Positions 11,236 to 41,060 are shown, numbered from the stretch's first letter. The stretch: 64,000 bases of DNA from IMGVR_UViG_3300049215_000771:310001-374000, one strand, 5' to 3'. Numbers and translations: made by a program. The notes: generated from the sequence alone by a model not told the origin.

Positions 11236-11277
11236 AAACTGCTCGGCTCACTCCTACATAGGTGAGCCGAGCAGTTT
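11236..11277 (+). promoter_or_regulatory. Perfect 16-bp inverted repeat with TACATAG in the loop
   Basis: aaactgctcggctcac-tcctacatag-gtgagccgagcagttt, 6 nt before ATG 11284. Confidence 0.7.
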
Positions 11278-11283
11278 CGTTTA

Positions 11284-12399
11284 ATGAAGGAAAGAAAGAT
11301 GCCGTTTTACCAAAACCCGTTTGATGAAGATTTCCGTGGCAACTGGATTCTGGACGACCGCCAGTTGTCCTTGACGTTCAAATGCCCAGGGAACCGAAAC
11401 CAAACGAACCTAGCTGTTTGTTGGAATTTTGAACCTTACGATCTGTCCACGTTCAACACGCTTACTATCTACTACGCCTTCGACCGGGCAGACCTGGTTC
11501 CAACCCAGCCTGGAGGTTTGTCGGCGGGGAGTGGTATTGCGCAGCGGGCATTTGTAAATTGGGCCTCCTTGCCCATTAACATAGCAGGTGCCAATCCTTC
11601 GGCAACACTGGCCGCTGAAATAGTCGCCATCCTGAATGCCAACACGACATTTTCAGATCATCTGGTTGCCAGCCTGGACAATTTCCAGCGTGGCACCAAC
11701 CAGCCGACCATGCGTGTAGTCATCAAAGGGAAGAAACCAAAACACGCTTTCAAGTTCTATTTTGACAATGGTGGAGCCGAGCAAAAGTTGAAATTCAACA
11801 AATATGCCGGCGTCTCCGACCTTCCTTCATACTTCGACCGCCACACCATCGCCAATCGTTTCCAGTACAACGACAGCGTTGGTCTACTTGTCCGTTTGTC
11901 ACAATCAATTTCAGGTATCAGCGCCGCCAACCCCACGGTGGTCACAACTGTCAACCCCCACGGACTAACCACGGGCGATGTAATTTACGTTGACAATTCT
12001 GATTCTAATCCGGTCATTGACGGGCAACAAACCGTAACAGTTACGGGTGCCAACACTTTCACAGTACCAGTCAATGTATCCACGGCGGGCACACGGGGCG
12101 AGTTCTTGACCACACAAAACTACAACGTGGTCAAAGACTATGGCCTTGACCCATTGTCAATGAAACAAGATTGGGAACAGTTGTCGGGTGGTTCCCAATC
12201 CTTCATGTTCACAAGTCAAACTTTTGACAGTAATAGTCCGCCACGGATGACACAACAGATTCTATACCATGCTGGTTCGGTTGCTGGCGACTTGGCGGTA
12301 AAAACGATCTATGTATACAGCGGAACGAACACCCAGCCGATTCAAATCTTCCAGATTCCGTATCAGTTGCAGACTGCCGACCTGATTACTCCACCGTAA
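11284..12399 (+). CDS. Putative virion structural protein with E1-FCCH-like beta domain
   Basis: ISAANPTVVTTVNPHGLTTGDVIYV...GANTFTV typical of the FCCH-like domain in phage tail proteins. Confidence 0.6.
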   Translation: MKERKMPFYQNPFDEDFRGNWILDDRQLSLTFKCPGNRNQTNLAVCWNFEPYDLSTFNTLTIYYAFDRADLVPTQPGGLSAGSGIAQRAFVNWASLPINIAGANPSATLAAEIVAILNANTTFSDHLVASLDNFQRGTNQPTMRVVIKGKKPKHAFKFYFDNGGAEQKLKFNKYAGVSDLPSYFDRHTIANRFQYNDSVGLLVRLSQSISGISAANPTVVTTVNPHGLTTGDVIYVDNSDSNPVIDGQQTVTVTGANTFTVPVNVSTAGTRGEFLTTQNYNVVKDYGLDPLSMKQDWEQLSGGSQSFMFTSQTFDSNSPPRMTQQILYHAGSVAGDLAVKTIYVYSGTNTQPIQIFQIPYQLQTADLITPP

Positions 12400-12513
12400 A
12401 ATCGTGATGAGTCCAGAAAGCTGCTGATTTGGATAAGTCGTAGAACGAACGTACAACCCGTGTTTCCTTGGGAGGCACGGGTTGTTTTGTATCTTCAATC
12501 ACTTCCACGGAAT

Positions 12514-12546
12514 AAAAAGGGCGGTTGTGAAGTTCCACACCCGCCC
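12514..12546 (-). terminator. Rho-independent terminator (minus strand)
   Basis: Minus strand gggcgggtgtg-gaactt-cacaaccgccc followed by T5. Confidence 0.65.
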
Positions 12547-12587
12547 ATTCGTGCATTAGTTCTTGCCATGTTTCTGGCGGCATTGTT

Positions 12588-13193
12588 TTACATACCGAAG
12601 ATTACATACCCCAAACCAACAACAAGGGCTGCGATGACACCCCACAGGATCAAGTTCATAGTCGGGTTCGGCTGAGTGTTGCCACCAACACGACGACCGA
12701 TTTCATCTGCCAGGCTACCTGGAACCGGCGTTGGCTGAACCGGCTGAACTGGCTGAACCGGGGCCGGCGCAGGCTGGGGTGCTGGCCTTACGTCGTCCTT
12801 CACCGCTTTCATCGCAGCGACAATCGCCTCGATCATTTCTTCCCTGGTAACGTGGCAAGGGTTGTCGTCTGTCTGCTGGTCAGTGCTGAGAGATCGAACC
12901 GATGGTTCTGCAACCAAATGTTCAACCAACTGCATCTGTACTTTCGGCTCGATAGACTCGACTTTTTTCTCAACCACTGCACCAGTTTTGTCGATGGTGT
13001 GGATTTCCCTCTCGTAAACGAAGGGCTTCCTTTTTTCTACAACTCGCTGCGAAAGGCGAAGTGGTCGCTCATCTTCAACGTGAAGTTCTACAACCCGTTC
13101 CGCCTCTCCGTTAGGATTCACATTCTCCGTGACCCGACGCTCGGCCCTGCGGCCATCTTCAAGCGTCCACTTTTCAGATTTGAAGTCGTCCAT
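12588..13193 (-). CDS. Membrane protein with C-terminal TM helix
   Basis: AGGAG RBS; charged N-terminus, Pro/Gln linker, LILWGVIAALVVGLGYVIF. Confidence 0.7.
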   Translation of the reverse strand: MDDFKSEKWTLEDGRRAERRVTENVNPNGEAERVVELHVEDERPLRLSQRVVEKRKPFVYEREIHTIDKTGAVVEKKVESIEPKVQMQLVEHLVAEPSVRSLSTDQQTDDNPCHVTREEMIEAIVAAMKAVKDDVRPAPQPAPAPVQPVQPVQPTPVPGSLADEIGRRVGGNTQPNPTMNLILWGVIAALVVGLGYVIFGM

Positions 13194-13261
13194 AATAGTT
13201 CTCCTTATAGAGACGGTCTAGGAGTATGTATCCAGCAGCAATGGAAATCTGAAGGAGACTA

Positions 13262-13549
13262 TTAGCACTTTGGCCGTACCTTGACCTCTCGGATGTCCAC
13301 GCCGGGACCACCCAATATCTTCTCGGCGATTTCTGTCGCTTCTGCCCTCGCTTCTTCAATGGTTGTAGCTTGAATAACAGGAAGGTTCTTGTACTCGATT
13401 CCAAGTCCCCTGTCATAACGAACGATTGCAACGAACTCGCCAATAACCGGCTTCTTCGTCTTGGCATCCTGCAAAGCACGATAGACGATCTCGACAGCCT
13501 CCTCGAAGCTGTGCCCTTTGGCGATGAGTTCCTGAAGTAGATTTTCCAT
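13262..13549 (-). CDS. Hypothetical protein
   Basis: ORF starting MENLL (ATG 13549). Confidence 0.55.
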   Translation of the reverse strand: MENLLQELIAKGHSFEEAVEIVYRALQDAKTKKPVIGEFVAIVRYDRGLGIEYKNLPVIQATTIEEARAEATEIAEKILGGPGVDIREVKVRPKC

Positions 13550-13596
13550 AGGATGGACCCTTTGTATATAGGAGCAATATCTTGATTTTACCCTGG

Positions 13597-14148
13597 CTAG
13601 ATGCCCCACTTCAACCGCATCTCCTGTAGAAATTCGGCCTGCTCCCTTCGGGCCTCACGGTTGACAACTTTCGCTTGTGCCTTCCTGTTTGTTCTTTCCT
13701 TCTTCTTGCAAGACTCAAACAAGTTCTCAACAACCTTCTCCCACTCGTGACCAGGAACGTACCCATCGAGTTCGTTGGCAAGTTCCCTGTAGACCAGGTG
13801 TCCCTGCCAATAAGTCTTCAAGTCCCTCGTTTCTTCGTTCCAGCTAATCTCCAAATGAATCCCCCGGCGCAGCCCATCAAAATGCCAACCAATAAGATGG
13901 GTTACTTCTTCCTCATCGAAATAAGGAATAGCATCTTCATCAGGAATTTCATCGAAATCAGGAAGAAAATTCTGCTCGAAGTTAGCAGAACCTTGACGCA
14001 CCATTGGCTCTCCGAAGGTTTTAGCAATGCGTGCCAGTTTTCCTTCACCGCCCATATAGCCATTCTTCATGGCCTCAATCGTGCGATGTTCTCGAATTGT
14101 TTGTTCTTTCCGAAGGAACAAAGCGGGATGTTCTTTTCGTTGATTCAT
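13597..14148 (-). CDS. Hypothetical protein
   Basis: 183-aa ORF preceded by TATATAG. Confidence 0.65.
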   Translation of the reverse strand: MNQRKEHPALFLRKEQTIREHRTIEAMKNGYMGGEGKLARIAKTFGEPMVRQGSANFEQNFLPDFDEIPDEDAIPYFDEEEVTHLIGWHFDGLRRGIHLEISWNEETRDLKTYWQGHLVYRELANELDGYVPGHEWEKVVENLFESCKKKERTNRKAQAKVVNREARREQAEFLQEMRLKWGI

Positions 14149-14186
14149 ACACTATATACCCACGTCTTCCACAATAAAGGAGTGTT

Positions 14187-15881
14187 ATGCCTATCCCAGC
14201 CAACAGATCGAAGATTGTTATCGGCAAAAACCTGCCGGTCCCTCGCCCACCCCGTCCAATCAATCAAGGTCCAGTACATTACTTCTATGACGATCCATCC
14301 ACCCCCGATCTCGTAGACGACGTGCCAATTGGTCCAACCCCACTGCCCGTCGCTATTCAGGGCTATATGGGCGGTGGACAACCAGTGGGATCGCTGTCGT
14401 GGCAAGCATCTACCAGCGCTGTTACCATCGGCAATGCCATGAGGTACATTACATCTCGTTGTAGCAGAAGGGCGATTGTCCGTTGGGCTGCAACCAACAC
14501 CTTGATGATTTTGGTCCGTGCTGGTGAGGATTTGAATGCTTACTACGACCGCCAGGCACTCAGGTTCTTCTACATCAAAGACCCTGTAACCAACCAGATT
14601 GTTTTTGCCTGCGATGCCGCCAGCGTAGTCGCCCACGAGTTGGGTCACGCTGTATTGGATATTCTACGCCCTGACTTCTGGAATACGCAGTCCCTTGAGA
14701 TTTTTGCTTTCCACGAAGCGTTCGGTGATTGCCACGCCCTGTTGGAGATTATGCAGCATGACAAGGTTCTCCAGTACGCATTGAACGAGACAGGCAACAA
14801 CCTGCTCCAAAGCAACGTCATCAGCCGACTCGCCAAGCAGATGGGAGCATGTGCCTATCATATCGCTCCTCCGTCCGCAGGATATAACCCCAACTACCTG
14901 AGAAACGCCGTCAACGACTTCAAGTACGTTCTGCCGGAAACTCTCCAGGAAGATACGCCAGATACAGTGTTGAGCAAGGAACCCCACAACTTCAGCCGTA
15001 TTTGGACTGGAGCATGGTGGGAGATCGTGGCAAAAATTCACCAGAAACTCATGGGCAGCATGGACCCACTGTCGGCTTTGCGCCAGGCTCGTGACACAGC
15101 CTGTGACTTGCTGGTAAATGCCGTGATCGACGTGCCCAATACACCACGCTTATACGACGCCTTGGCACGCCAGATGCTTGTGGTCGATGGACAGAATGGA
15201 GGCGCTTACAAAGACATACTCACCGAGGTATTCAACAACAGGAATATCCTCCTGAACAGGGTCACAGCGATGAGCGCAGTCGAGCAAGACACCATTGCCG
15301 CCATGCCAAACGCAAACGTCGTTCTGCACCCGATGGGCAAAAGCGTGTACCTCAGAAACAACAAAAAACTAAAAATGATGGATCACACCGTTTCTGCTCT
15401 TGCCAATGGGCGGCAGAATCCGTTGTATGGAGTTCATGTGGAAGTTCCGATGGAGAGTGCCTACCATTTCAATCATCAAGGTGTTATGGTAGACAGCCAT
15501 GAGGCTGATGAGGGGGAAGCCATCGAGTCAGCCCGGCACTGCCTGGACTTCCTGCACAATCACCGGATGGTCAGTCCTGATCCCAAAACGGCGTTCGAGA
15601 TCAAGGACAACAACCTGGTGCGCACTCACGCTTGCGGTGCTTGGTGTCCGAAGTGTAACAGAAACAATGCTTGCATTCCGGGTTCACCGGAATATCAGAA
15701 AGGATACAAGGCCAACAACAACGCCGGTTGCGGGTGCAAAGGGTGCGGTAACATCCCGGTGTGCGATTGTGATGGACCACCACCAGGACCAAGGCAAAAA
15801 CTAGGTTGCTTCACTACGGTTAAAACGGGTGGTGCAGCCAGATATAGCCACGGGCAGAACGCTTCAAGGAAAGTTTGCTAA
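14187..15881 (+). CDS. Gluzincin metallopeptidase (M36/M4-like) with Cys-rich C-terminus
   Basis: NAYYD, VAHELGH (HExxH), HEAFGD, EPHNFS; AAGGAG RBS. Confidence 0.85.
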   Translation: MPIPANRSKIVIGKNLPVPRPPRPINQGPVHYFYDDPSTPDLVDDVPIGPTPLPVAIQGYMGGGQPVGSLSWQASTSAVTIGNAMRYITSRCSRRAIVRWAATNTLMILVRAGEDLNAYYDRQALRFFYIKDPVTNQIVFACDAASVVAHELGHAVLDILRPDFWNTQSLEIFAFHEAFGDCHALLEIMQHDKVLQYALNETGNNLLQSNVISRLAKQMGACAYHIAPPSAGYNPNYLRNAVNDFKYVLPETLQEDTPDTVLSKEPHNFSRIWTGAWWEIVAKIHQKLMGSMDPLSALRQARDTACDLLVNAVIDVPNTPRLYDALARQMLVVDGQNGGAYKDILTEVFNNRNILLNRVTAMSAVEQDTIAAMPNANVVLHPMGKSVYLRNNKKLKMMDHTVSALANGRQNPLYGVHVEVPMESAYHFNHQGVMVDSHEADEGEAIESARHCLDFLHNHRMVSPDPKTAFEIKDNNLVRTHACGAWCPKCNRNNACIPGSPEYQKGYKANNNAGCGCKGCGNIPVCDCDGPPPGPRQKLGCFTTVKTGGAARYSHGQNASRKVC

Positions 15882-18255: not shown

Positions 18256-18999
18256 ATGGACACAATCGTAACATTTTCTGGCGCTGGATTGTCGAACGAA
18301 TCCGGCATCCCCACGTTCCGAGATTCCAATGGCTTGTGGCACAACCACAAAGTCGAGGACGTTGCCGACCACAAAGCCTGGGAACGACCCGATAATCGTC
18401 AACTCATGCTGGACTTCTACGCCGAGAGGTTCAACAACATTCACTCAGTCCAACCCAATGCCGCCCACTATGCCCTGGCGAAGTTGGAACAGAAATACAA
18501 AGTAATCAACATCACACAGAACATTGATGATCTGTTGGAGAGGGCTGGTTGTACGAATGTCTGGCACCTGCATGGCAGCATCAACTCTCGTAAATGTGAG
18601 TGGCACAAGTCGATCACCAATTTGGATGGCGACATCAACTTCAAATGCGACTATCAAACTGTTCACACGGAGCCGGTCAAGCTGGGTGATTTGTGCCCCA
18701 AATGTGGTGGGCAGTTGCGCCCGGATGTTGTTTGGTTCGGCGAAGCCGTTGACATGAAGTACAAAGAACTGGATGAACTGGCTGCAATCGCCAAGGTTTT
18801 CATCGGCATCGGCACTAGCGCTCAGGTACAACCGGCTGCGGGGTTGTTGTTCACTTTCAGGGTCGCCGAGAAGAAGTATTTCATCGACCTGAAGCCGCCG
18901 TTGAGATTACACAGCTTCACCAGGTTGGAAGGCAAAGCCGGCGACCACATGCCGCCGCTGGCGGAAGAGTTACTTCTTCTTGCTGAAAATAGGACGTGA
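18256..18999 (+). CDS. cobB: Sirtuin (NAD-dependent deacylase, CobB-like)
   Basis: GAGLSNESGIPTFRD, TQNIDDL, HLHGS, CPKCGGQLRPDVVWFGE, GTSAQV. Confidence 0.93.
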   Translation: MDTIVTFSGAGLSNESGIPTFRDSNGLWHNHKVEDVADHKAWERPDNRQLMLDFYAERFNNIHSVQPNAAHYALAKLEQKYKVINITQNIDDLLERAGCTNVWHLHGSINSRKCEWHKSITNLDGDINFKCDYQTVHTEPVKLGDLCPKCGGQLRPDVVWFGEAVDMKYKELDELAAIAKVFIGIGTSAQVQPAAGLLFTFRVAEKKYFIDLKPPLRLHSFTRLEGKAGDHMPPLAEELLLLAENRT

Positions 19000-19235: not shown

Positions 19236-20309
19236 ATGAACCAACGGACTGACCCAAGGGGATGGCTTATCGCTGGACTGGCAGCCATAATCCTCCTGGT
19301 CGGCGGCTACAAGCTGGAGAAGAAATATCACCCGGCTCGGCCCGAAATGCCGACTCCAAGGACGGAGATAATCCCTCCTCCCCCGCCTCAGCCGGAACCT
19401 CCAAAAACGCCGGCCACTCCCAACATTTCAACAGCGATCCCGGCGTTTGCCCAATACCCAGGCATCGTAACCCAGCTTCAGAAATGGAACCAGGAAGCGC
19501 CGGACCTGACCGAAGTAGGCACCTACGGCAAGTCCCGTCAGGGCAAAGACTTAACCTACATTCGTGTAACCAACAAATTCGACAGTAGCCCCAAACCTGT
19601 CGTGTTGATCCACGGCTGCATCCACGGCAATGAGCCGCACGCCACAACAACCGTCATGGCCCTCATCGGGACCATGCTGGCAAACTATGGCAAAGATCAG
19701 GAGGTCACGACCCTCATCAACACACGGGACATCTACTTCGTACCTGTCATGTGCGTTGATAGTTATCCAAACTCCCGACACATTGACGGCGTGGACCCGA
19801 ACCGTGATTACCCGTGTCCGAAATACCCGAACAAAACTTCAACACCATGCGTGAAGGCCATGCAGGACTTCTTCACGAAGATCAAACCCAAGGCGGTGAT
19901 GAGTTGCCATACGTTCGGACGAGTGTTCTTGTGCCCGTGGGGAGATCAGATGCAGACCTGTCCGAATTGGAGCGACTACCAGCGCATCATCGGCAAGATT
20001 TCTACAATGTGCCAGTACCGCATCGACCGGGCTTGCAATATGTACGGCCAGCCAATTCATGGCGGCGAACTTGACTGGTACTACCGTCGTGGAGCCTTCT
20101 CGGTCGTCATGGAAATCGGCACACACCAACACCCGCCGTCCATGCAAGAAATCCAGTCGGAGTTCCAAAGAACCTACAAGGGTTTGCTGTGCTTCATCCA
20201 GGAAGCCCCAACCGTCAACATCCAGCCCGTGTCATTTATAGAAGACCAATGGCTGCGAACGGAGAAAATGATAGTACCGATTAAATGCCACGTCAGCATG
20301 ACGAACTAA
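19236..20309 (+). CDS. M14 zinc carboxypeptidase, membrane anchor + Pro-rich linker
   Basis: IHGNE (HxxE), DPNRDY, SCHTFG, GGELDW, MEIG; GGAGG RBS; TATAAT at 19201. Confidence 0.9.
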   Translation: MNQRTDPRGWLIAGLAAIILLVGGYKLEKKYHPARPEMPTPRTEIIPPPPPQPEPPKTPATPNISTAIPAFAQYPGIVTQLQKWNQEAPDLTEVGTYGKSRQGKDLTYIRVTNKFDSSPKPVVLIHGCIHGNEPHATTTVMALIGTMLANYGKDQEVTTLINTRDIYFVPVMCVDSYPNSRHIDGVDPNRDYPCPKYPNKTSTPCVKAMQDFFTKIKPKAVMSCHTFGRVFLCPWGDQMQTCPNWSDYQRIIGKISTMCQYRIDRACNMYGQPIHGGELDWYYRRGAFSVVMEIGTHQHPPSMQEIQSEFQRTYKGLLCFIQEAPTVNIQPVSFIEDQWLRTEKMIVPIKCHVSMTN

Positions 20310-24738: not shown

Positions 24739-25083
24739 TCAAGTGTTAGGCATTTCTCCGTGCGCCGAGTCCGCACTGTTCGGAACTACCACGTCACCAT
24801 CACCATGATCGAACCCATGACCGAAGGACGCTCCCATGCGTGGCTTCTTCTTGCTGGGCTTCGGGTGGGCGTTCTTGTGATTCATCTTGTCCAGTTCGAT
24901 CTGAATGTCCGGGTCTTGTTTGGCAAGACGTTGTAGAAACGAGACTACTTCGGAGTGATATTTCTCGGCGGCGTGCTGAAGCGCCTTCATGATACCACTT
25001 TCTTCCCCATCCTTGTCGTCGGCCTGATCGACATCCAGAAAGCTATTTTCCTTCAAACCTACGAACTGACTGAATGTTTTCAT
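24739..25083 (-). CDS. Small protein with MKTFSQF leader
   Basis: GAGGG RBS, TACATAG upstream. Confidence 0.65.
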   Translation of the reverse strand: MKTFSQFVGLKENSFLDVDQADDKDGEESGIMKALQHAAEKYHSEVVSFLQRLAKQDPDIQIELDKMNHKNAHPKPSKKKPRMGASFGHGFDHGDGDVVVPNSADSAHGEMPNT

Positions 25084-25257
25084 AATCCCTCGCTGTTTTT
25101 GCATCTCACTGCATACCTATGTAGTGAGGGACACTGAATTTGAAGGCCCAACCCCGAAGAATTAAAGGGGTCGTTAATATATACCTCTATATGCGGGGGC
25201 ATCCGAGTTGTTGGAATGATTCGGAGAACAACACACAGCACTAGGGAGTCGCAAACT

Positions 25258-28842: not shown

Positions 28843-30279
28843 ATGAACGCAAATTCCAAATTCCTGAACGAAGCTAGAGAGTTGGAAGGTCGTTGGGGCA
28901 AGACTGGCCTCTTGGAAGGCATTGAAGATCGCTACATCCGATCCGCCACCGCCGTTCTGCTTGAAAACCAGCGCCTCATGAACGAAGTTTCGACCGACAC
29001 TGGCGACATCGCTCAGTTCAAGCGTATCAGCATCCCGTTGGTACGTCGTATTTACCCGCAGCTAATTGCTAACAAGATTGTATCTGTTCAGCCATTGCTC
29101 GGCCCAACAGGTTTGGTGTACTACCTGCGCTTCCGGTACTCGTCCAACAAGGGCGCTACTCGTGGAGCGGACAACAACGGCGGCTTCCCGGCTGACGATG
29201 TGAACACCCTCATGCAGTTGGCTGATGGTACTGCCAACTTGGACATTTTCTACACGCACCAGTTCGTGCAGAACGAGTCCACCAGCACCGACAACGGTGG
29301 CAACGTCACTTCGGCGTACAGCCCGTTGGAACACACCCCGATCCTGGCCGGCACCATCACGGGCACGATCTATGACGGCTCCCTCGCAGTGCAGACCTTC
29401 GTGGTTTCCTCGACCGGAACCTTCACCTTCTCCAACATCGGTAGCCCAGCTACCTACGTCACCGCTGGTTCTTTGAACCTGACGACTGGCGAGTTGGTGT
29501 TGACTTGGAACTCGGCCCCAGGCCCGAACCACGCTGTACTTTCCTACGAGTACAACATGGAATGTCAACAAGATTTGCCGGAAATCAACTTGGTCATTGA
29601 GTCGGAAGAAATTGCCGCCAAGACCCGCAAGTTGAAGGCTGTATGGTCCTACGAAGCGCAGCAGGACTTGCGCTCGCAGCACAACCTCGACGCCGAGGCT
29701 GAGTTGACGGCTGTATTGGCCCAGGAAATCAACCTCGAAATCGACCGTGAAGTGTTGACGGACCTCCGTAACAACAGCGGTACGGTAGCGGCATGGGATT
29801 TCAACACGGCATTGGGCGAAACCATCAAGGAGAAGTATGAGTCGCTGTATGTGAAGGTTGTTGAAATCAGCAACGTCATCCACAGGAAGACTCTTCGTGG
29901 TGGTGCAAACTGGATGGTAACTTCCCCTGAAGTTGCTTCCATCTTCGAGACGGCAACCGCTGGTTTCGCACCGGCTCCATCTGAGACGTTCACTTCGTCG
30001 CTGGGTATCCAGTACGTCGGAACCGTCAACAACAGGTGGCGGTTGTACAAAGACCCGTTGTTCCCATCGAACCAGATTCTCATGGGGTACAAGGGTGATT
30101 CTTACATGGATTCGGGTTACTTCTATTGCCCCTACGTCCCGCTCACGCAGACGCCTGTGGTTTTGGACCCTGAGTCCTTCTGTCCGAGGAAGGGTATCCT
30201 TACACGTTACGGGAAGAAACTGTTGCGTGAAGGGGCCAAGTTCTACGCCAGGATGTCCATCGCCAACTTCGTCATCTAA
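28843..30279 (+). CDS. gp23: Major capsid protein (T4 gp23-like)
   Basis: LLENQ, IPLVRR, VQPLLGPTGLVYYLR, RKLKAVWS.E..QDL, LDAEAEL, YCPYVPL, GILTRYG. Confidence 0.97.
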   Translation: MNANSKFLNEARELEGRWGKTGLLEGIEDRYIRSATAVLLENQRLMNEVSTDTGDIAQFKRISIPLVRRIYPQLIANKIVSVQPLLGPTGLVYYLRFRYSSNKGATRGADNNGGFPADDVNTLMQLADGTANLDIFYTHQFVQNESTSTDNGGNVTSAYSPLEHTPILAGTITGTIYDGSLAVQTFVVSSTGTFTFSNIGSPATYVTAGSLNLTTGELVLTWNSAPGPNHAVLSYEYNMECQQDLPEINLVIESEEIAAKTRKLKAVWSYEAQQDLRSQHNLDAEAELTAVLAQEINLEIDREVLTDLRNNSGTVAAWDFNTALGETIKEKYESLYVKVVEISNVIHRKTLRGGANWMVTSPEVASIFETATAGFAPAPSETFTSSLGIQYVGTVNNRWRLYKDPLFPSNQILMGYKGDSYMDSGYFYCPYVPLTQTPVVLDPESFCPRKGILTRYGKKLLREGAKFYARMSIANFVI

Positions 30280-30307
30280 ACATGACAAGTTGATGGCAGC
30301 TTGAAAC
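30249..30307 (+). repeat. Direct repeat copy 1 (last codons of MCP + 3' UTR)
   Basis: caggatgtccatcgccaacttcgtcatctaaacatgacaagttgatggcagcttgaaac. Confidence 0.95.
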
Positions 30308-30345
30308 AAAGCCCTGGAGATTTTTCTCCAGGGCTTTTTCTTTTC
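30308..30345 (+). terminator. Terminator after MCP
   Basis: aaagccctggaga-tttt-tctccagggcttt + T tract. Confidence 0.85.
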
Positions 30346-30433
30346 CTTCTCCTGCATCAACCTGCGTCCGCTCCCTGGACCGGAAAACCTCTCGAAAGCC
30401 TGGAAATACGATGCGGGAAAGTTCCAAGAGTGG

Positions 30434-31237
30434 TTAAAAGACCTCATCTAACGTAGAATACCAGATTTTTTCATCAACCTCACAGATTGGATTCTGATGC
30501 AGATAATCTGGATACTTGGCGCATGGGGGCAAATCTCTGCTGCGAGCGAAAGCAAAATCGGTAATGCAGCCGGTCCTCAAGTAAAGACTCACTGCGAAAA
30601 TGTCCTGAGAATCAAATCTACAACTACTTGTAGAATGATGTTTGGATTTGGTGTGGATTAGTCGGGCGTATTTGGTGTTTGTTCCCCATAATGACTTGAT
30701 CTCGACTTTCTTTTTTGTGTCATTTTTGGATACAGCGAAATCGAAATTGTAGTATCTTCCAATGTGTTTTGCACAATCTCCTGGCATCTTTTTAACCTTG
30801 AAATTGTTACAACGACAATACCGAACAAATTCGTGTTCGACAAGGCCGCTCAAAAAGGAACCGCTTGTTCCATAACGATCTATTTCCAGCAAATCGCCAA
30901 CCTGGAGATGAGTGAGAGCCTGCGACAAATCATCTTTCTTGTTACTGCCTACATATATTTCTCCTTCCGCTAGATTGTTGGAGACAGCAATTATTCGCCC
31001 TTTTGCCAATTCCTTCCACTGCATTGTTTCAACAAAATTGCTACGAACAAATTTGCCGGTCTGTCCTGGAACCAACAATTCGTCATCTGTAGCATCTAAA
31101 ACAAACGAAGCTGTCCATTGCGTTCCATTCTTGCGAAGCGTCTTATCAATTCGCAAGATCGGAATGTAAGCAGGAAGTAGTACAGATTTCAAAGAATCTT
31201 GCGTCAGTCCCTTGTATTTTGCTTGTAACAGACCCAT
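30434..31237 (-). CDS. Putative PD-(D/E)XK restriction-like endonuclease (AT-rich cargo)
   Basis: VEHEF...NFDF...VEIKS catalytic-like pattern; ORF from ATG 31237 lies wholly between the repeats. Confidence 0.55.
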   Translation of the reverse strand: MGLLQAKYKGLTQDSLKSVLLPAYIPILRIDKTLRKNGTQWTASFVLDATDDELLVPGQTGKFVRSNFVETMQWKELAKGRIIAVSNNLAEGEIYVGSNKKDDLSQALTHLQVGDLLEIDRYGTSGSFLSGLVEHEFVRYCRCNNFKVKKMPGDCAKHIGRYYNFDFAVSKNDTKKKVEIKSLWGTNTKYARLIHTKSKHHSTSSCRFDSQDIFAVSLYLRTGCITDFAFARSRDLPPCAKYPDYLHQNPICEVDEKIWYSTLDEVF

Positions 31238-31260
31238 GCTTAATGATATGTCAATAAGCA

Positions 31261-31320
31261 CAGGATGTCCATCGCCAACTTCGTCATCTAAAACATGACA
31301 AGTTGATGGCAGCTTGAAAC
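31261..31320 (+). repeat. Direct repeat copy 2
   Basis: Identical to 30249-30307 except one extra A. Confidence 0.95.
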
Positions 31321-31323
31321 GAC

Positions 31324-31358
31324 AAAGGCCAGGCATTTCTGCCTGGCCTTTTTCTTTT
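31324..31358 (+). terminator. Terminator after repeat copy 2
   Basis: aaaggccaggca-tttc-tgcctggccttt + T tract. Confidence 0.8.
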
Positions 31359-31381
31359 GTGTCAAGTGCATACAATTCGAT

Positions 31382-32044
31382 ATGACTACATCACTACAAA
31401 TCTGTGGCTCTTGCAACGAGGCCAAACCACCAGAAGAATTCTACCCACCTACTTCCCATGAAAAACGCTGTCGCTCTTGCGCCAAATTAGAACAACACGC
31501 CAGGGTGAAAGCGGCCCACGCAGCAGGAATGACTCGCCGCCAGTGGGTCAGAAATGTTTCTGCCGAGGCTCGGAGCGAGGCTCTAGCCTTCTGGCGATCT
31601 ACACTCCTTCAAATTCAAACAAACACTCCGAAGGAGCAACCAAAAAAGAAAGCGCCCAAAGCTACATTCGATCATCTTGCTCTGCAAACCAGAGAACACA
31701 GCCGGTCGATGAAGAAAAAGATCAAGGAAGAACGGGCGAAACTGAACAACAAGCAAATAGACATCAAGGAAGGATTCATCTACGCAATCGTCAACCCGAA
31801 CATGAGTGAAGTTAGCCTGGGCATGACGCTTTCCTATGAAGATAGACTGAAAACCTATCAGCGCTACGATCCACACAAACGATTCTCTGTGGCGTATGCA
31901 AGGTTTGTCAAAAACAGGAGCAAGGCCGAGGCCAGGCTACATGCCGCCTTCAAAAAAGCCAGACTCTACGATGACGCAGAATGGTTCGCCATCACTGTAG
32001 AAGAAGCCATCAAAGTGATGGATGAAATAGCTGAAACAAGTTGA
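31382..32044 (+). CDS. GIY-YIG/T5orf172-like putative homing endonuclease with N-terminal Zn finger
   Basis: CGSC...CRSC; GFIYAI...SLGMT...RL...AEARLH...EWF. Confidence 0.75.
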   Translation: MTTSLQICGSCNEAKPPEEFYPPTSHEKRCRSCAKLEQHARVKAAHAAGMTRRQWVRNVSAEARSEALAFWRSTLLQIQTNTPKEQPKKKAPKATFDHLALQTREHSRSMKKKIKEERAKLNNKQIDIKEGFIYAIVNPNMSEVSLGMTLSYEDRLKTYQRYDPHKRFSVAYARFVKNRSKAEARLHAAFKKARLYDDAEWFAITVEEAIKVMDEIAETS

Positions 32045-35423: not shown

Positions 35424-35427
35424 GGGT

Positions 35428-36462: not shown

Positions 36463-37012
36463 AATGCTTTTCGGCTTTCTTGATGACTTCCTTGGCGACG
36501 GCTTTGGGGTCTTTCTCCTCAGCGCCGATGCCAAGGATTCGCATTTTGTTGGTGATTTCAACACTGTGAACATCTAGGTTGTCGATCAGCAACCACTTCC
36601 TGCCAGCCAGGTGATACTTCTCAGCAAGTTCGCCTGGCTTTGTTTCTTTGGCGCTGTGCATTCCCTTGACGTATTTCGACCAGCCCAACACTTCAACGAC
36701 TTTCTCAACGTAGTCGATGCGGCTGTGGCTCAAGATGATGAAATCGGCGAACTTGGAAATGGCTTTGACGAGGTTGGTCGCTCCGGGTCGTGGAAACAAG
36801 TACATATCCTGATCTTCGGCATGGATCAGGCGCACATCCGGGTAGGGCTTCTTGTTTGGAACGATCATTTTGGCAAATTCTTTGTTCTGTGGATGGTCCT
36901 TCAGCCAGCCAATTTCCATATTGTGAACGAGGGTTTCGTCCAGATCGGAGAACACGGCGGGGCGTCCACTTTCATTTTGTTCAAGCCAAAGGCCAAATTG
37001 CATGAGGTTCAT
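36338..37012 (-). CDS. HAD-superfamily NIF/FCP1-like phosphatase
   Basis: SDLDETL (DxDxT), RPGA..L, LLIDN. Confidence 0.8.
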   Translation of the reverse strand: MNLMQFGLWLEQNESGRPAVFSDLDETLVHNMEIGWLKDHPQNKEFAKMIVPNKKPYPDVRLIHAEDQDMYLFPRPGATNLVKAISKFADFIILSHSRIDYVEKVVEVLGWSKYVKGMHSAKETKPGELAEKYHLAGRKWLLIDNLDVHSVEITNKMRILGIGAEEKDPKAVAKEVIKKAEKHFIDVCDWVPTVHEYDDYELWRVLPKVKEMLGLDWTKGDPYF

Positions 37013-37047
37013 CGCAAGGTATTTATCGCTGCACCGTATATATTTGC

Positions 37048-37809
37048 ATGGTGAGTCTCGATGGTTTCACAGAGTATGTCTTCAACGAGAGCGTTGAAGT
37101 AATTGATGCAAAGAAGCAAGTCCGTGATATTCTCAAGCAAAAGCGGGCCACAAACAGGAAAGGTCTTCTTATTTGTTTCGAGGGTATCGACGGAGTAGGC
37201 AAAACTACGCAGGTTGACAAATTGATGGATTACCTGGACGGTAAGGGATACGAAGTCATCCACACCAAATGGAACTCTTCCCCCTTGCTCAAAAAACCCA
37301 TCAAGAAAGCCAAAGAAAAACATATGCTCACGCCGATCTTGTACTCGCTGCTGCACGCTGCCGACATGGTGGTGAGGTACGAGAACGAGATCGTGCCGGC
37401 CTTGAACGCCAACAAGATCGTAGTTTCCGATAGATATATCTATACATCTATGGCTCGTGACTCGGCGAGGGGCGTTGACACGGGCATCTTAGAGAAAATA
37501 TACGCCGATATTCGCCAGCCGGATATTTTGTTCCATTGCGTATTGCCCATCCATCGAGCCTTCCATCGCCTCGTCAAAGAAAAAGACCTGACCTACTACG
37601 GCGTCGGCATGGATTTGAACCTTGCGGACAACATGGAAGACAGCTACATTAAATACGAGAACCTGGTAGACAAGGCTTACCGGCGCATCCTGCCGAAAGT
37701 CACCAGCTACGTCAAACTCGACATGGGCAAAAGCATTGAAGAAATTGCCCTGGAAGTCGAGCGTGTTGTCAAAGAAAAAACAGGCATCGGCAAGTACAAG
37801 AAGGATTGA
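37048..37809 (+). CDS. tmk: Thymidylate kinase
   Basis: FEGIDGVGKTTQ, SDRYIYTS.A, PDILF. Confidence 0.9.
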   Translation: MVSLDGFTEYVFNESVEVIDAKKQVRDILKQKRATNRKGLLICFEGIDGVGKTTQVDKLMDYLDGKGYEVIHTKWNSSPLLKKPIKKAKEKHMLTPILYSLLHAADMVVRYENEIVPALNANKIVVSDRYIYTSMARDSARGVDTGILEKIYADIRQPDILFHCVLPIHRAFHRLVKEKDLTYYGVGMDLNLADNMEDSYIKYENLVDKAYRRILPKVTSYVKLDMGKSIEEIALEVERVVKEKTGIGKYKKD

Positions 37810-37812
37810 AAT

Positions 37813-38118
37813 ATGACTGTGTACGTCGATCCACTTAGAGAGGTTGATCCCAGGCCCGGCTGGAAGTGGAATACAGCCTGCCACCTGATTGCAGACTCAC
37901 TTGACGAGTTACATGCCTTTGCTGCCCGCCTGGGCTTGCGGAGGGCATGGTTCCAACCACATCGCATATTTGACCACTACGATCTTCACTTGCGGAAGCG
38001 AAAACTGGCTGTTAAGCTGGGAGCAGTGGAGGTTGATATGACTTGGCTCAAAAATCGCATCAGGGCCAAACAAAATGAGCGAGCCAAAGTTTCAGGTAGG
38101 TCAACAGTTGATTGTTAG
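37813..38118 (+). CDS. DUF4031 family protein
   Basis: MTVYVD, CHLIADS.DELHAFAARLGLRRAWFQ, HYDL. Confidence 0.85.
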   Translation: MTVYVDPLREVDPRPGWKWNTACHLIADSLDELHAFAARLGLRRAWFQPHRIFDHYDLHLRKRKLAVKLGAVEVDMTWLKNRIRAKQNERAKVSGRSTVDC

Positions 38119-38362
38119 ACACGGCAGCGGAAGTTTTCTGCACGTTGTCGTTAAGAAGGTCATCAAATCTGCGAAAAAATACTGGTACGAGTTTGTAGAA
38201 ACAGAAGAACAGTTTCCGATGTTTTTGTCGGAAACTGTTCTGTTGAAGATTTTACATCCTGTTCTCGGTCAGGTCGTGGTCGATACTATCCTCATTCCGG
38301 CTGCGGAAGTAGGCACGAAGATCATCTCTCAACTTGATATTATGATCGGTCAAAGCCCATAG
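38075..38362 (+). CDS. Hypothetical KOW/SH3-like protein
   Basis: PKFQVGQ.L.V; 3' end overlaps the convergent gene. Confidence 0.45.
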   Translation: MSEPKFQVGQQLIVRHGSGSFLHVVVKKVIKSAKKYWYEFVETEEQFPMFLSETVLLKILHPVLGQVVVDTILIPAAEVGTKIISQLDIMIGQSP

Positions 38363-39232
38363 ACCCTGCCAATCTTTCTTGAGATCGAGCAGTGGGTGGT
38401 ACTTGTTGTCAATAAGAATCTGCCATCGTTCCTTGTACTTTCTGTCACGTTTCTTTCCATGCCAGTGATGTAACACAGTCCCAGGCATATATCCCACATT
38501 CCTGTGGATATGGGTTTCGGCCCGCTCCTGCCATCGCATCAACTCTCCCATGTACGCCGGGTCCAGCTTGTCGCCGGGCAACGATTGTTCGATCTTGCCG
38601 ATCAATCCGAAAGCCATATGACGGTCGGCAGCGCCCAAGATGGCAATGTCGATCAAACCGCCCAGGTGGTCGATGGCTTCACGACGGGCTGCCCAGGCAA
38701 AACCAGGGTGCCAATTGGAGTAACACTTCGTCGGTGGAAAACCGTGCAAATAGCTGTAGACAAAACCACGGTGACGCTGGAAGGTTTCGTGATTGGGGCA
38801 CAAGTCTTGCGCCGTCGAGAACATCTGGATAACATGGTAATGCTGAAGCTGGTTCAGTGTTTCACGCACCCAATCATGGCGGGCGAAAGAAATATCGGCG
38901 TCAATCCAGGCGACGTACTCCCAATCGGAAGGCAAGCGAGAAATAGCGACGTTAATCATGTTTTCTTTGTGCCAGATTTCCGAACGGGTGCGCAGTTGGA
39001 TGTGCCGAGGGTTATTGGCTTCAGTTACAGCGAACGGGCGATGCCCGAAAGCCACTTCGACAGTGTAGAGTTCTGCGCCGGCATCACTACACATCTTGGC
39101 GAAGTCTTCGTACAACTTGTAGCGAGTACGATAACGACAAGGGTTTGTAATAGGCGCAATCACATACAACTTAGCATTGTCCGGGTGCAACCTATTGGAC
39201 AGCGGGTGAGTAACGTGCATCGAATGGCTCAT
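38252..39232 (-). CDS. GT-A-fold glycosyltransferase-like protein (paralog of 23724-24653)
   Basis: WHKENMIN, AWIDAD, PGFAWAARR, HHWHG; AAGGAG RBS before ATG 39232. Confidence 0.65.
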   Translation of the reverse strand: MSHSMHVTHPLSNRLHPDNAKLYVIAPITNPCRYRTRYKLYEDFAKMCSDAGAELYTVEVAFGHRPFAVTEANNPRHIQLRTRSEIWHKENMINVAISRLPSDWEYVAWIDADISFARHDWVRETLNQLQHYHVIQMFSTAQDLCPNHETFQRHRGFVYSYLHGFPPTKCYSNWHPGFAWAARREAIDHLGGLIDIAILGAADRHMAFGLIGKIEQSLPGDKLDPAYMGELMRWQERAETHIHRNVGYMPGTVLHHWHGKKRDRKYKERWQILIDNKYHPLLDLKKDWQGLWALTDHNIKLRDDLRAYFRSRNEDSIDHDLTENRM

Positions 39233-39333
39233 GGGAGACAACTCCTTTTGTTGTAGAATTCAACCTATCTAGTCTTTCCGTTCCCCTTTCTTTTTAGACC
39301 TTTGTACCTGCCGTCCATTGAAAGGAGAATGCG

Positions 39334-39915
39334 ATGGTAATAACCGACAAGTTTGAAATTGATGGGAAGGAAGTTACAGGTCATTTCAGCCTGGAATATC
39401 TGCAAGATGCAGAAATCCAAATGCGGCTTTTGGGAAAATTCCGCACCACCGAGATCACGGATGAGGAAATCGCCATCTGGAAGGCTATATCCTTCGGCAT
39501 TGACCGCACACCGAGCGGCGAATTGGATCAATCACCCGAAGCTGTAACCTGGCGTGAGCTATTGGGATGCGACGGGCCGGGGTTCCGTTGCCCCATTTTG
39601 ACCGGCGAGATCACCCAGCAAGAGATCAACGAGTGGGGCGTCGAGTACGAAAAACTGAAAAAGATAGATTTCGAGGCCGTGAAAAAGAAGTATAATGTAA
39701 AGTTCGAGTCCGACCACGAGCCGCCGTACCCGGAGTACGATACTTCCACGCCTGGAGATTGCTGGCCTCCGTTTCAGCCTACTGCGCCGATTCAATGGCC
39801 TGCCGAGTCAACGATTTTCCCGTGGGTGGAAGACACAAGGCCGAAGGCAAACAACATCCTGGACTCGTTCCTGAACTTTTTCTCGAATCCAGATACCTAT
39901 GGACCTCGTAGTTGA
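39334..39915 (+). CDS. Hypothetical protein
   Basis: AAGGAG RBS, 193 aa. Confidence 0.6.
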   Translation: MVITDKFEIDGKEVTGHFSLEYLQDAEIQMRLLGKFRTTEITDEEIAIWKAISFGIDRTPSGELDQSPEAVTWRELLGCDGPGFRCPILTGEITQQEINEWGVEYEKLKKIDFEAVKKKYNVKFESDHEPPYPEYDTSTPGDCWPPFQPTAPIQWPAESTIFPWVEDTRPKANNILDSFLNFFSNPDTYGPRS

Positions 39916-40774
39916 AACCGACGTAGGACATGACCCCGATGACCTGTTTGCTCTCTGTTACCTCGTTGCTGCTGGGGTCAATGTCCGAACCATCCTGATC
40001 TCTCCTGGTGATCCCGACCAAATCGCCATAGCCCGGTACTTCTGTGATCGGGTTGGGTTGAAAATACCAATCGGGGTCGCCCAGGAGGGCAGGATGAAAC
40101 TCTCTTCCGGCTCGATTCACCATGAACTGCTCAAGCGAGCCAACCTGCCACTGGAAGCCAAGGCTGATGGCCTGGGAGTAGACATTCTCCAAGATGTGTT
40201 CAAGAACTATCCAGACTCCGAACTTTTCATCATTGGTCCCGTGACCAGCATCGGCACTTACCTTGGCAAAACTGGTCGCAAGGTGAAGCGGGCAACGATG
40301 CAGGGCGGATTTCTCTCCTATCGCTACCACGCCCCGATGAAACGAGAGCCGAAGTTTGAGGACAAAACCTGGATGCCGACCTTCAACCTCAACGGGGATC
40401 GCAAGGCTGGCGTGAAATTTCTGGAGGCCGACATCGAAGAACGTCGGATGGTCGGCAAAAACGTCTGCCACACGGTTGTTTTTAACCAGGAACGATACGA
40501 ACAAATCGAGGTACAACGAACGAACGTCAACGGTGCCGCCGCCATGCTGTTCGACTACGCTGCTGGTTTGTATCTTGACAAACATGAAGGCAAGAAATTC
40601 CACGATCCGACTGCCGCCTGTCTCCACCTGCACCCGGAGATCGGGACATGGGTAAGGGGTAGAACAGTGAAGATGGAATCGGGCTGGGGAACTGAACTCG
40701 ATCCCGATGGAGATTACATCTGCGCCGACGTGGATCACGACAAATTGTGGCGATACATTCTGAACCAGAAATAG
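39899..40774 (+). CDS. Inosine/uridine-preferring nucleoside hydrolase family
   Basis: ETDVGHDPDD, GPVTSI, MQGG, FN...D, FHDP. Confidence 0.85.
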   Translation: MDLVVETDVGHDPDDLFALCYLVAAGVNVRTILISPGDPDQIAIARYFCDRVGLKIPIGVAQEGRMKLSSGSIHHELLKRANLPLEAKADGLGVDILQDVFKNYPDSELFIIGPVTSIGTYLGKTGRKVKRATMQGGFLSYRYHAPMKREPKFEDKTWMPTFNLNGDRKAGVKFLEADIEERRMVGKNVCHTVVFNQERYEQIEVQRTNVNGAAAMLFDYAAGLYLDKHEGKKFHDPTAACLHLHPEIGTWVRGRTVKMESGWGTELDPDGDYICADVDHDKLWRYILNQK

Positions 40775-40840
40775 TAGATACCACCATGACAAACTTCAGG
40801 AGTGGCTTCCGTTAGGTTCCCCAACCTAACAGGAGGCCAC

Positions 40841-41020
40841 ATGAGCCACAGACGAATCAGACTCCCACGAGTCGCCCAGGAGAAACGAAACAACCAAGAA
40901 GGCTGGAATCGAGCCAGCCGCAGCCCCATCCATCTTCCTGACCATTGGTCTGAGGAACAGTGGGTTCGGGATCAGCGAAGCTGGAAGAAGTTTCGCAAGA
41001 CACAATACAAGCCGAAATGA
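40841..41020 (+). CDS. Small basic protein
   Basis: AGGAGG RBS; ...RSWKKFRKTQYK; small hairpin 40811-40830 just upstream. Confidence 0.6.
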   Translation: MSHRRIRLPRVAQEKRNNQEGWNRASRSPIHLPDHWSEEQWVRDQRSWKKFRKTQYKPK

Positions 41021-41022
41021 TG

Positions 41023-41060
41023 AACCGAGCCGCACTAGATAGGTGCGGCTCGGTTTTTTT
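41023..41060 (+). terminator. Terminator hairpin whose loop is TAGATAG
   Basis: aaccgagccgcac-tagatag-gtgcggctcggtt + T run. Confidence 0.85.

What the first reader, a model, noticed from the sequence alone, without database searches (positions are those of the whole stretch)
11236..41060. Late-promoter-like motif placed exactly in the loop of perfect hairpins
Seen: 11236-11277 (16-bp stem, loop contains TACATAG) precedes the structural gene at 11284. 41023-41055 (13-bp stem plus U tract, loop = TAGATAG) precedes the head-fragment mini-genes. Both stems contain gagccg/cggctc. Established: T4 uses hairpins disrupted by internal late promoters to time expression. Inference: a terminator/promoter switch in which early read-through stops while late transcripts start in the 3' arm. 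A cruciform-dependent promoter is an alternative.
Basis: partly seen in the sequence, partly recalled or inferred. Interest (0 to 1): 0.6.

Follow-up and report, generated by a model that had tools for sequence, protein, structure and literature searches.

The report
Late promoter nested in terminator hairpins
Two very stable hairpins in a 533-kb T4-like huge phage from moss look like transcription stop signals whose loops carry the phage's own promoter motif, and the same design precedes the same virion gene in related huge phages, so at least that one is probably a compact stop-and-restart signal and not chance.

Summary
Both hairpins exist as described: 16-bp and 13-bp perfect stems with TACATAG and TAGATAG in the loops. 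The loop motif is a real signal in this genome. TAnATA sits exactly 4-5 nt before the ATG of about 40 long ORFs that lack a Shine-Dalgarno sequence, has no -35 hexamer, and dominates the structural-gene window. The genome also encodes a gp55-like small sigma factor.

In this genome alone, two motif-in-hairpin cases are not significant (0.64 expected, p about 0.13). For site 1, comparison settles it. Upstream of the orthologous virion gene, several huge-phage lineages keep a T-run-tailed hairpin with TAnATA in the apical loop, although the stems are unrelated in sequence. Other relatives have a terminator followed by the promoter.

Site 2 is a canonical terminator, but its only orthologue has the same stem without the loop motif.

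Best reading: an intrinsic terminator with a nested late-type promoter, so that transcripts start in the 3' arm and escape the hairpin. This is a new variant of known T4-type designs (late promoter inside a hairpin; PeSL cassettes). No transcript ends were mapped.

The parts
11236..11251 (+). Site 1, 5' arm of the hairpin (16 nt). The A-run at its 5' edge falls where TAnATA promoters show a weak A/T-rich upstream element.
   Evidence: upstream element
11252..11261 (+). Site 1 loop. TACATA at 11255-11260 is a -10-like element with no -35 hexamer.
   Evidence: The orthologue in G001 has TAAATA at the same place.
11262..11277 (+). Site 1, 3' arm. The predicted transcript start is A11265 or G11266 (hexamer end plus 5-6 nt).
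   Evidence: The spacing rule comes from the leaderless genes. The start itself is inferred, not mapped.
11275..11285 (+). Site 1 interrupted T-run (TTTCGTTTAAT); a weak U-tract.
   Evidence: Relatives have stronger T-runs.
11299..12399 (+). Conserved 366-aa virion-type protein, served by site 1. The Shine-Dalgarno sequence AAGGAAAG is at 11288-11295. The true start is MPFYQNPF.
8751..8757 (+). TATATAG motif heading the upstream + strand unit (8776-11222) that runs into site 1.
41023..41035 (+). Site 2, 5' arm. It starts 2 nt after the stop codon of 40841-41020.
41036..41042 (+). Site 2 loop TAGATAG. TAGATA at 41036-41041 matches the promoter hexamer but is absent from the G001 orthologue.
41043..41055 (+). 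Site 2, 3' arm. The predicted start, if the motif fires, is C41046 or G41047.
   Evidence: Geometry; inferred.
41054..41065 (+). Site 2 T-run (T7 then GTTG); a canonical U-tract.
40775..40780 (+). TAGATA motif of the small unit that ends at site 2. It is followed 5 nt later by a conserved 9-codon leaderless upstream ORF (40786-40815).
41097..41617 (+). Two overlapping mini-genes after site 2 (41097-41372 and 41357-41617). Both end in YRSIDDPWE and the second carries a capsid-protein fragment.

Best explanation
Each element is an intrinsic (Rho-independent) terminator that closes the upstream + strand unit. Its apical loop houses the phage's -10-type promoter hexamer TAnATA, which needs no -35 hexamer. 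This promoter class is probably read by host RNA polymerase carrying the phage's gp55-like small sigma factor. Polymerases arriving from upstream transcribe both arms, form the RNA hairpin and stop at the T-run. Polymerases that initiate at the loop motif start 4-5 nt inside the 3' arm, so their RNA lacks the 5' arm and cannot form the terminator. They run on into the next gene, the conserved 366-aa virion protein at site 1 and the capsid-fragment mini-genes at site 2. The effect is to uncouple the downstream gene's expression from the upstream unit in the smallest possible space. The long perfect stems probably compensate for the oversized loop.

Shown: the hairpins, the genome-wide promoter-like behaviour of the motif, the sigma gene, and conservation of the nested design at site 1. 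Inferred: termination, the start points, the timing, and the functionality of the site 2 motif.
For: 1. TAnATA behaves as a promoter. It is enriched in intergenic DNA. It lies 4-5 nt before the ATG in 29 called genes, against 3.1 expected (binomial p 4e-20), nearly all without a Shine-Dalgarno sequence. Without any gene caller, TAnATA+N5+ATG followed by an ORF of 80 aa or more occurs 31 times and N4 9 times, while other spacings occur 0-6 times. The relative G002 shows the same rule (N4 14 times, N5 8 times).
2. No -35 hexamer is conserved, only a weak A/T-rich patch 15-22 nt upstream of the hexamer.
3. 30 of 82 genes in the structural window carry the motif upstream, and none carries a sigma-70-type promoter. 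Those promoters cluster elsewhere in the genome.
4. A 179-aa ORF at G000:413426-413965 (- strand) has as its best PHROG match the T4 gp55 family 'late sigma transcription factor', and passes the Pfam Sigma70_r2 cut-off. The portal, capsid protein, prohead protease and terminase are T4-type.
5. At site 1, G001 keeps the 16-bp stem with one compensatory pair and TAAATA in the loop. Four further groups of related loci, with completely different stems, all have TAnATA in the apical loop followed by T-runs. On the protein tree the state fills a well-supported clade of 9 rows and two other clades.
6. Several T-runs are not matched by an upstream A-run, so they are true U-tracts on the gene strand.
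7. G002 has at least 4 such hairpins. In two of them the ATG of a leaderless ORF of 256 aa or more lies in the 3' arm exactly 5 nt after TAAATA.
8. Site 2 starts 2 nt after a stop codon and is called a terminator.
Against: No transcript 5' or 3' end was mapped. The only RNA data are assembled metatranscriptome contigs, which cannot show ends. In this genome alone the coincidence is not significant (p about 0.13). The loop motif of site 2 is missing from its only orthologue, which has the same outer stem and T-run, and a conserved CTTACAATTC 10-mer downstream could instead be what drives the mini-genes. Site 1 has a 10-nt loop and an interrupted T-run and fails the simple terminator scan. 'Late' timing is inferred from gene content and the gp55 homologue only. 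No T4 gp45-type clamp was found, and gp33 was not searched for. A polymerase that terminates at the T-run must first cross the nested promoter, so insulation is less clean than with a terminator followed by a promoter.
Confidence: 0.6

Rival explanations
1. Chance. These are ordinary terminators whose A/T-rich loops happen to match a loose 6-mer, and the loop motifs do not fire. This may hold for site 2 alone.
For: Two of 127 motifs lie in strong stems against 0.64 expected, p about 0.13. The site 2 orthologue in G001 has the same stem with loop TTTAG and no motif. The shared GAGCCG hexamer lies on opposite arms.
Against: At site 1 the nested motif recurs in at least 5 groups of related loci with unrelated stems, and always points at the gene. 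Typical terminator loops here are 3-6 nt, so loops of 7-23 nt that hold exactly the hexamer are not the default. In G002, leaderless ATGs sit at the canonical 5 nt inside the 3' arms.
Confidence: 0.15
2. DNA-level hairpin or cruciform promoter. The inverted repeat extrudes in supercoiled DNA and presents the -10 element single-stranded in the loop. This would ease open-complex formation and might make late initiation independent of a clamp activator, in the manner of phage N4 early promoters.
For: The stems are perfect and long, without wobble pairs at both window sites and in L129/L146. Single-stranded DNA folds are -19.7 and -18.2 kcal/mol, z -7.7 and -9.1. The hexamer is centred in the loop in every lineage. 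No gp45-type clamp was found.
Against: T-runs follow the stems in every lineage, and several are unmatched by A-runs, which a cruciform promoter does not need. Most TAnATA promoters in the genome (125 of 127) have no strong flanking repeat, and the distribution of enclosing stems equals the controls. Relatives do well with a terminator followed by the promoter. Loops of 7-23 nt are unfavourable for extrusion (general knowledge). The test of wobble-pair orientation was uninformative (6 against 8).
Confidence: 0.08
3. A T4-style translational switch. In long transcripts the hairpin hides the ribosome-binding site or start codon, and only the transcript started inside the hairpin is translated.
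For: The design is documented for T4 e, soc, I-TevI/II/III and segB (PMC2988022), and is visible at T4 I-TevII. In the window, UUUCC at 11225-11229 can pair with the Shine-Dalgarno sequence of the virion gene: the unpaired probability of the stretch from Shine-Dalgarno to AUG is 0.31 in the long RNA and 0.56 in the short one. In G002 two nested-promoter hairpins do bury a leaderless ATG in the 3' arm.
Against: At both window sites the Shine-Dalgarno sequence and the ATG lie outside the stems. Across 11 orthologous hairpins, accessibility does not differ consistently between long and short RNAs. The T-runs point to termination, not occlusion.
Confidence: 0.07
4. A mobile or recombinogenic regulatory cassette, a late-promoter counterpart of PeSLs. 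Its main evolutionary role would be module shuffling, with the apical module CAC-TAsATAG-GTG inserted into pre-existing terminators.
For: Both loops share CAC..TA[C/G]ATAGGTG. Relative to G001, site 2 differs only by replacement of the apical A-TTTAG-T with GCAC-TAGATAG-GTGC. A weak third copy, CTCAC-TACATAGGT..GTGAG, lies near 25123 on the - strand. PeSLs are known in T4-type phages (PMC2839356, PMC4122927).
Against: There are only 2-3 copies in 533 kb. The stems differ between sites. No target duplications or repeated flanks were seen. This reading does not exclude the functional one.
Confidence: 0.1

Closest known systems
T4 late promoters placed inside RNA hairpins (genes e, soc, 49, I-TevI/II/III, segB; Aeh1 mobE)
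   Same: A late promoter without a -35 hexamer lies within an inverted repeat, so that late transcripts lack the 5' arm and escape the hairpin's effect. The phage is T4-type and has a gp55-type sigma factor (PMC2988022).
   Different: In T4 the hairpin hides the ribosome-binding site and acts on translation of long early or middle transcripts. Here the hairpin has a T-run and sits after a stop codon, so it acts as a terminator. The Shine-Dalgarno sequence is outside the stem, the promoter hexamer is exactly the apical loop, and the upstream units use the same promoter class. Relatives (G002) do have a version that buries a leaderless ATG.
PeSLs (promoter-early stem-loops) of T4-type phages
   Same: They are composite terminator and promoter cassettes between genes of T4-type phages (PMC2839356, PMC4122927). 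This genome also has PeSL-like terminator plus TTTACA promoter tandems.
   Different: PeSLs carry sigma-70-type early promoters next to the stem-loop, are many conserved copies, and lie in hyperplastic regions. Here the promoter is of the late type, is nested in the loop, occurs in few copies with unrelated stems, and lies in the structural module.
Canonical intrinsic (Rho-independent) terminators
   Same: They share a GC-rich stem, a T-run and a position just after a stop codon.
   Different: The loops are enlarged to 7-10 nt (up to 23 nt with an inner helix in relatives) to hold a promoter hexamer, and the stems are unusually long and perfect. Site 1 is among the six longest perfect stems in 533 kb.
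Phage N4 virion-RNA-polymerase hairpin promoters
   Same: The promoter is associated with an inverted repeat that could extrude as a DNA hairpin.
   Different: By general knowledge, N4 promoters have 5-7 bp stems and 3-nt loops, and are read by a giant single-subunit polymerase. Here the stems are 13-16 bp and the loops 7-10 nt, T-runs follow, and the same hexamer works without any repeat at about 125 other sites.

Membership tests
Intrinsic terminator | Stable GC-rich RNA hairpin | tested here: met
   The folds are -33.8 and -31.1 kcal/mol, z about -7, and 0 of 200 shuffles fold as well.
Intrinsic terminator | U-tract immediately 3' of the stem | tested here: inconclusive
   Site 2 has a T7 run and passes the scan. 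Site 1 has TTTCGTTT, partly inside the stem, and fails the scan. The orthologous hairpins in relatives have clear T-runs.
Intrinsic terminator | RNA 3' ends at the U-tract | not testable with these tools
   Only assembled RNA contigs were available.
T4-type late promoter (gp55-dependent) | A short A/T-rich -10-type element alone, with no -35 hexamer | tested here: met
   The information profile of 40 aligned TAnATA+N4-5+ATG sites shows no -35 hexamer, only a weak A/T patch. The hexamer is TAnATA, not T4's TATAAATA.
T4-type late promoter (gp55-dependent) | gp55-family sigma factor encoded by the phage | tested here: met
   A 179-aa ORF matches phrog_234 at E 5.7e-8 and Sigma70_r2 at 31.9 bits, above the cut-off. 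A direct search with T4 gp55 found nothing.
T4-type late promoter (gp55-dependent) | gp45 sliding-clamp activator and gp33 co-activator | tested here: not met
   phrog_223 (gp45) has no match in the genome. gp33 was not searched for. Another clamp type is not excluded.
T4-type late promoter (gp55-dependent) | Precedes virion genes and is active late | tested here: inconclusive
   30 of 82 genes in the structural window carry the motif and none a sigma-70-type promoter. The capsid-protein and portal genes lack an exact match. Timing cannot be tested.
T4 hairpin translational switch | The hairpin sequesters the Shine-Dalgarno sequence or AUG in long transcripts | tested here: not met
   The Shine-Dalgarno sequence and ATG lie outside both stems. 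Across 11 orthologous hairpins there is no consistent change in accessibility.
T4 hairpin translational switch | The promoter lies inside the hairpin, so the late RNA lacks the 5' arm | tested here: met
   By geometry, the hexamer end plus 5-6 nt gives 11265/11266 and 41046/41047, both inside the 3' arms.
PeSL cassette | A sigma-70-type early promoter beside the stem-loop, as many conserved copies | tested here: not met
   The promoter has no -35 hexamer and is nested, and the two stems are unrelated. True PeSL-like tandems exist elsewhere in the genome.
N4-type hairpin promoter | A 5-7 bp stem with a 3-nt loop, dependent on the hairpin | tested here: not met
   The stems are 13-16 bp and the loops 7-10 nt. 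125 of 127 intergenic motifs lack a strong repeat. The polymerase type was not tested.

The most novel reading that the evidence does not exclude
The nesting is itself functional and not just compact. One version is that the polymerase released at the U-tract, 15-20 bp past the loop, is recaptured by the nested promoter, so termination feeds re-initiation. The other is that the inverted repeat presents the -10 hexamer single-stranded, so that this huge phage, which lacks a T4 gp45-type clamp, can fire late promoters without a clamp activator. In both versions the A-run that pairs with the U-tract doubles as the promoter's weak upstream A/T element, which would make the element an integrated terminator-promoter unit conserved across huge T4-like phages.
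Probability: 0.12. Interest if true: 0.8.

Novelty: new variant of a known kind. Interest (0 to 1): 0.55.

Why it matters
Nothing is known experimentally about transcription in uncultured phages of more than 500 kb. This analysis yields a testable promoter code for one such clade: TAnATA with no -35 hexamer, very often producing leaderless mRNAs, plus a separate sigma-70-type class. It also yields a conserved composite signal that stops one transcription unit and starts the next within about 45 bp. If the nested design is confirmed, it extends the T4 principle of a late promoter inside a hairpin from control of translation to control of termination. It also offers a very compact insulating part for synthetic biology, and it would help operon and gene-start annotation in huge-phage metagenomes, where leaderless starts are easily mis-called, as at 11284 versus 11299 and 35428.

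Tried and rejected
- Megablast of the site 1 region against GenBank phages found no match.
- A single-protein search for relatives of the virion gene found nothing. The portal and an alignment-based search did work.
- A direct search of the genome with T4 gp55 found nothing; the PHROG profile was needed.
- The gp45 clamp profile had no hit.
- Rfam at gathering thresholds found no family anywhere in the window.
- The wobble-orientation test, meant to separate RNA-level from DNA-level selection, gave G:U on the gene strand 6 against A.C 8, which is uninformative. I dropped an earlier impression that wobbles favoured the RNA reading.
- Sequestration of the ribosome-binding site is not conserved across the family, so this was rejected as the common mechanism.
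- General enrichment of inverted repeats around TAnATA in this genome was rejected: the distribution equals the controls.
- The strand-orientation control on T-run hairpins was confounded, because many stems carry A-runs and T-runs and score on both strands.
- The 366-aa protein gave a confident model (pLDDT 90) but no whole-fold match in the PDB or BFVD. Only a small beta-barrel domain matched, with low-TM hits to fibre and baseplate proteins, so 'tail protein' rests on a weak PHROG hit.
- For site 2, only one orthologous context exists among IMG/VR contigs.
- Metatranscriptome contigs are 100% identical to the phage, and one begins at 11279, 2 nt after the stem. Contigs cannot show starts and coverage is thin.
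- Literature searches found no description of a promoter nested in a terminator loop, but the library is incomplete.
- T4 was scanned only over its first 50 kb.


Full report
**Context.** The window is bases 310001-374000 of a 532,729-bp virus record. DNA runs that hold the region almost completely come from moss metagenomes. The portal, major capsid protein (Pfam Gp23, E 7e-86), prohead protease and large terminase are T4-type. The nearest GenBank record is a 595-kb uncultured phage with 59% portal identity, and IMG/VR holds many relatives. This is therefore an uncultured huge phage distantly related to T4.

**The observation.**
- Site 1 has 16 perfect pairs (11236-11251 with 11262-11277) and a 10-nt loop containing TACATAG.
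- Site 2 has 13 perfect pairs (41023-41035 with 41043-41055), the loop TAGATAG and a T7 run.
- As RNA they fold at -33.8 and -31.1 kcal/mol, with z about -7.

Three details need correcting. The gene after site 1 starts at 11299, where MPFYQNPF is conserved in all homologues, not at 11284. The shared hexamer GAGCCG lies on opposite arms, so the two hairpins are not copies of one element. Site 1 has an interrupted T-run and is not called a terminator by the simple scan, whereas site 2 is.

**Is the loop motif a promoter?** TAnATA is among the most over-represented intergenic words, and its position is extremely non-random.
- In 29 called genes the hexamer ends 4 or 5 nt before the ATG, against 3.1 expected (p 4e-20). 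Nearly all of these genes lack a Shine-Dalgarno sequence.
- Without any gene caller, TAnATA+N5+ATG opening an ORF of 80 aa or more occurs 31 times and N4 9 times. Other spacings occur 0-6 times.
- The 223-kb relative G002 shows the same rule.

The simplest reading is a -10-type element whose transcripts begin at the A of the ATG, giving leaderless mRNAs. Forty aligned sites show no -35 hexamer, only a weak A/T-rich patch 15-22 nt upstream of the hexamer.

A second, classical promoter class exists elsewhere in the genome: TTTACA, about 17 nt, then an extended -10 of the form TAnnAT. It often sits directly after terminator hairpins. No called gene of the structural window has one, whereas 30 of 82 window genes have TAnATA upstream.

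The genome encodes a 179-aa protein whose best PHROG match is the T4 gp55 'late sigma transcription factor' family. It also passes the Pfam Sigma70_r2 threshold. No gp45-type clamp was found.

'Late-promoter-like' is thus a fair description. The timing itself is inferred.

**Chance or design?** Within this genome alone the case is weak. Of 127 intergenic motifs, two lie inside stems of 13 bp or more, and random intergenic positions predict 0.64 (p about 0.13). TAnATA motifs in general are not flanked by inverted repeats more than controls are.

**Comparison settles site 1.** Sixty-one IMG/VR loci encode homologues of the 366-aa protein.
- The closest, G001 (74% amino-acid identity), keeps the 16-bp stem with one compensatory G:C to A:T change and has TAAATA in the loop.
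- Four further groups of related loci have quite different stems: AAAATACCCGTC, AGACACTAC, GGTTACTC and ATACCCACT plus an inner TCACTC helix.
- In each of them the apical loop is TAnATA plus one or a few bases, it points at the gene, and a T-run follows.
- On the protein tree this state fills a well-supported clade of nine rows that includes the window, plus two other clades. Well-supported branches force at least two changes (quick tree).
- Other relatives have a terminator followed by the promoter, which looks like the uncompacted form.

G002 has at least four such hairpins. In two of them the ATG of a leaderless ORF of 256 aa or more lies in the 3' arm exactly 5 nt after TAAATA. That is independent evidence that loop motifs fire.

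**Site 2 is weaker.** Only one orthologous context exists, in G001. There the outer stem and T-run are the same but the loop is TTTAG, with no motif. A 10-mer, CTTACAATTC, downstream of the hairpin is conserved between the two genomes and may matter more for the mini-genes.

**Mechanism.** The spacing rule places the start at 11265/11266 and 41046/41047, 4-5 nt inside the 3' arms. RNA started there cannot form the hairpin, while RNA from upstream can form it and meets the T-run. I therefore read the elements as terminators with a nested restart promoter.

The unit entering site 1 is headed by TATATAG at 8751. The unit entering site 2 is headed by TAGATA at 40775-40780, which is conserved in G001.

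The T4 precedent is real but acts on translation by hiding the ribosome-binding site (PMC2988022; T4 I-TevII). Here the Shine-Dalgarno sequence is outside the stems, and its accessibility does not change consistently across 11 orthologous hairpins.

A DNA cruciform promoter cannot be excluded. However, the T-runs, several of them unmatched by A-runs, and the 125 hairpin-free TAnATA sites argue against it. The wobble-orientation test was uninformative.

**RNA data.** Moss metatranscriptome contigs match the phage at 100% identity. One begins at 11279, 2 nt after the stem, and none spans the hairpin. Contigs cannot show ends and coverage is thin.

**Comparison with known systems.** The closest are:
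- T4 late promoters inside translational hairpins;
- PeSL terminator plus early-promoter cassettes (PMC2839356, PMC4122927);
- ordinary intrinsic terminators.

The element shares the logic of the first, the composite nature of the second and the anatomy of the third. No paper retrieved describes a late-type promoter occupying the apical loop of a terminator. I rate it a new variant of a known kind.

**Verdict.**

| Item | Verdict | Confidence |
|---|---|---|
| Observation | confirmed | - |
| Nested terminator-promoter model | best explanation | about 0.6 overall |
| Site 1 | stronger case | about 0.7 |
| Loop motif of site 2 | weaker case | about 0.4 |

Noticed in passing
Whole genome; in the window for example 4005, 14158 (-), 35417, 42816 and 57021: Leaderless gene starts are common. 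TAnATA followed by 4-5 nt and an ATG opens about 40 long ORFs without a Shine-Dalgarno sequence, and some sigma-70-type promoters also sit 35 nt before an ATG. The same rule holds in the relative G002. Gene callers will mis-start these genes.
   Followed up: yes
window 41097-41372 and 41357-41617; also G000 18171, 58399, 122564, 238198 (-), 246723 (-), 453783, 518027, 518244, 518477: Eleven small ORFs end in a near-identical C-terminal motif, (K)KKYRSIDDPWE. Five carry fragments 57-77% identical to pieces of the major capsid protein (28843-30279). A Peptidase_C39 gene (42827-43429) lies next to the window pair. The function is unknown.
   Followed up: partly
window 40775-40815; L092 about 1550-1600 (- strand): A TAGATA motif is followed 5 nt later by a 9-codon leaderless upstream ORF (MTNFRSGFR*) ahead of the 59-aa gene 40841-41020. 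The peptide and the motif are conserved in G001 (MNTNFRSGFR*).
   Followed up: partly
G000 outside the window, for example 49015-49070, 79855-79910, 165233-165290, 209059, 389677, 425473: Terminator hairpins are followed immediately by (c)TTTGC-TTTACA sigma-70-type promoters. These are PeSL-like terminator/early-promoter cassettes, and there are about 55 intergenic promoters of this class.
   Followed up: partly
G002 37433-37467 and 136280-136316 (loci L168 and L173): In these promoter-in-loop hairpins the 3' arm contains the leaderless ATG of an ORF of 256 aa or more. This would be a leaderless version of the T4 'late promoter frees the start site' switch.
   Followed up: partly
G000 507904-507938: A 13-bp perfect palindrome has TATATAG / CTATATA inside the arms. 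It appears to be a back-to-back pair of divergent TAnATA promoters serving genes on both strands.
   Followed up: no
window 25103-25123 (- strand): CTCAC-TACATAGGTATGCA-GTGAG is a weak 5-bp version of the site 1 apical module, 34 nt before the gene 24739-25083 (-).
   Followed up: no
window 30280-31710: After the capsid-protein gene there is about 1.4 kb with no confident + strand gene. It is bracketed by two strong terminator-like hairpins, at 30308-30337 and 31324-31351, which have similar AAAGCC..GGCTTT stems.
   Followed up: no
window 18256-18999, 19236-20309, 39899-40774, 42827-43429: Auxiliary genes lie inside the structural module: SIR2-family, M14 zinc carboxypeptidase, inosine-uridine nucleoside hydrolase and C39 peptidase genes.
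   Followed up: no
window 9500-13000: Contigs 100% identical to the phage occur in several moss and plant metatranscriptome runs, which suggests active infection in the moss microbiome.
   Followed up: partly
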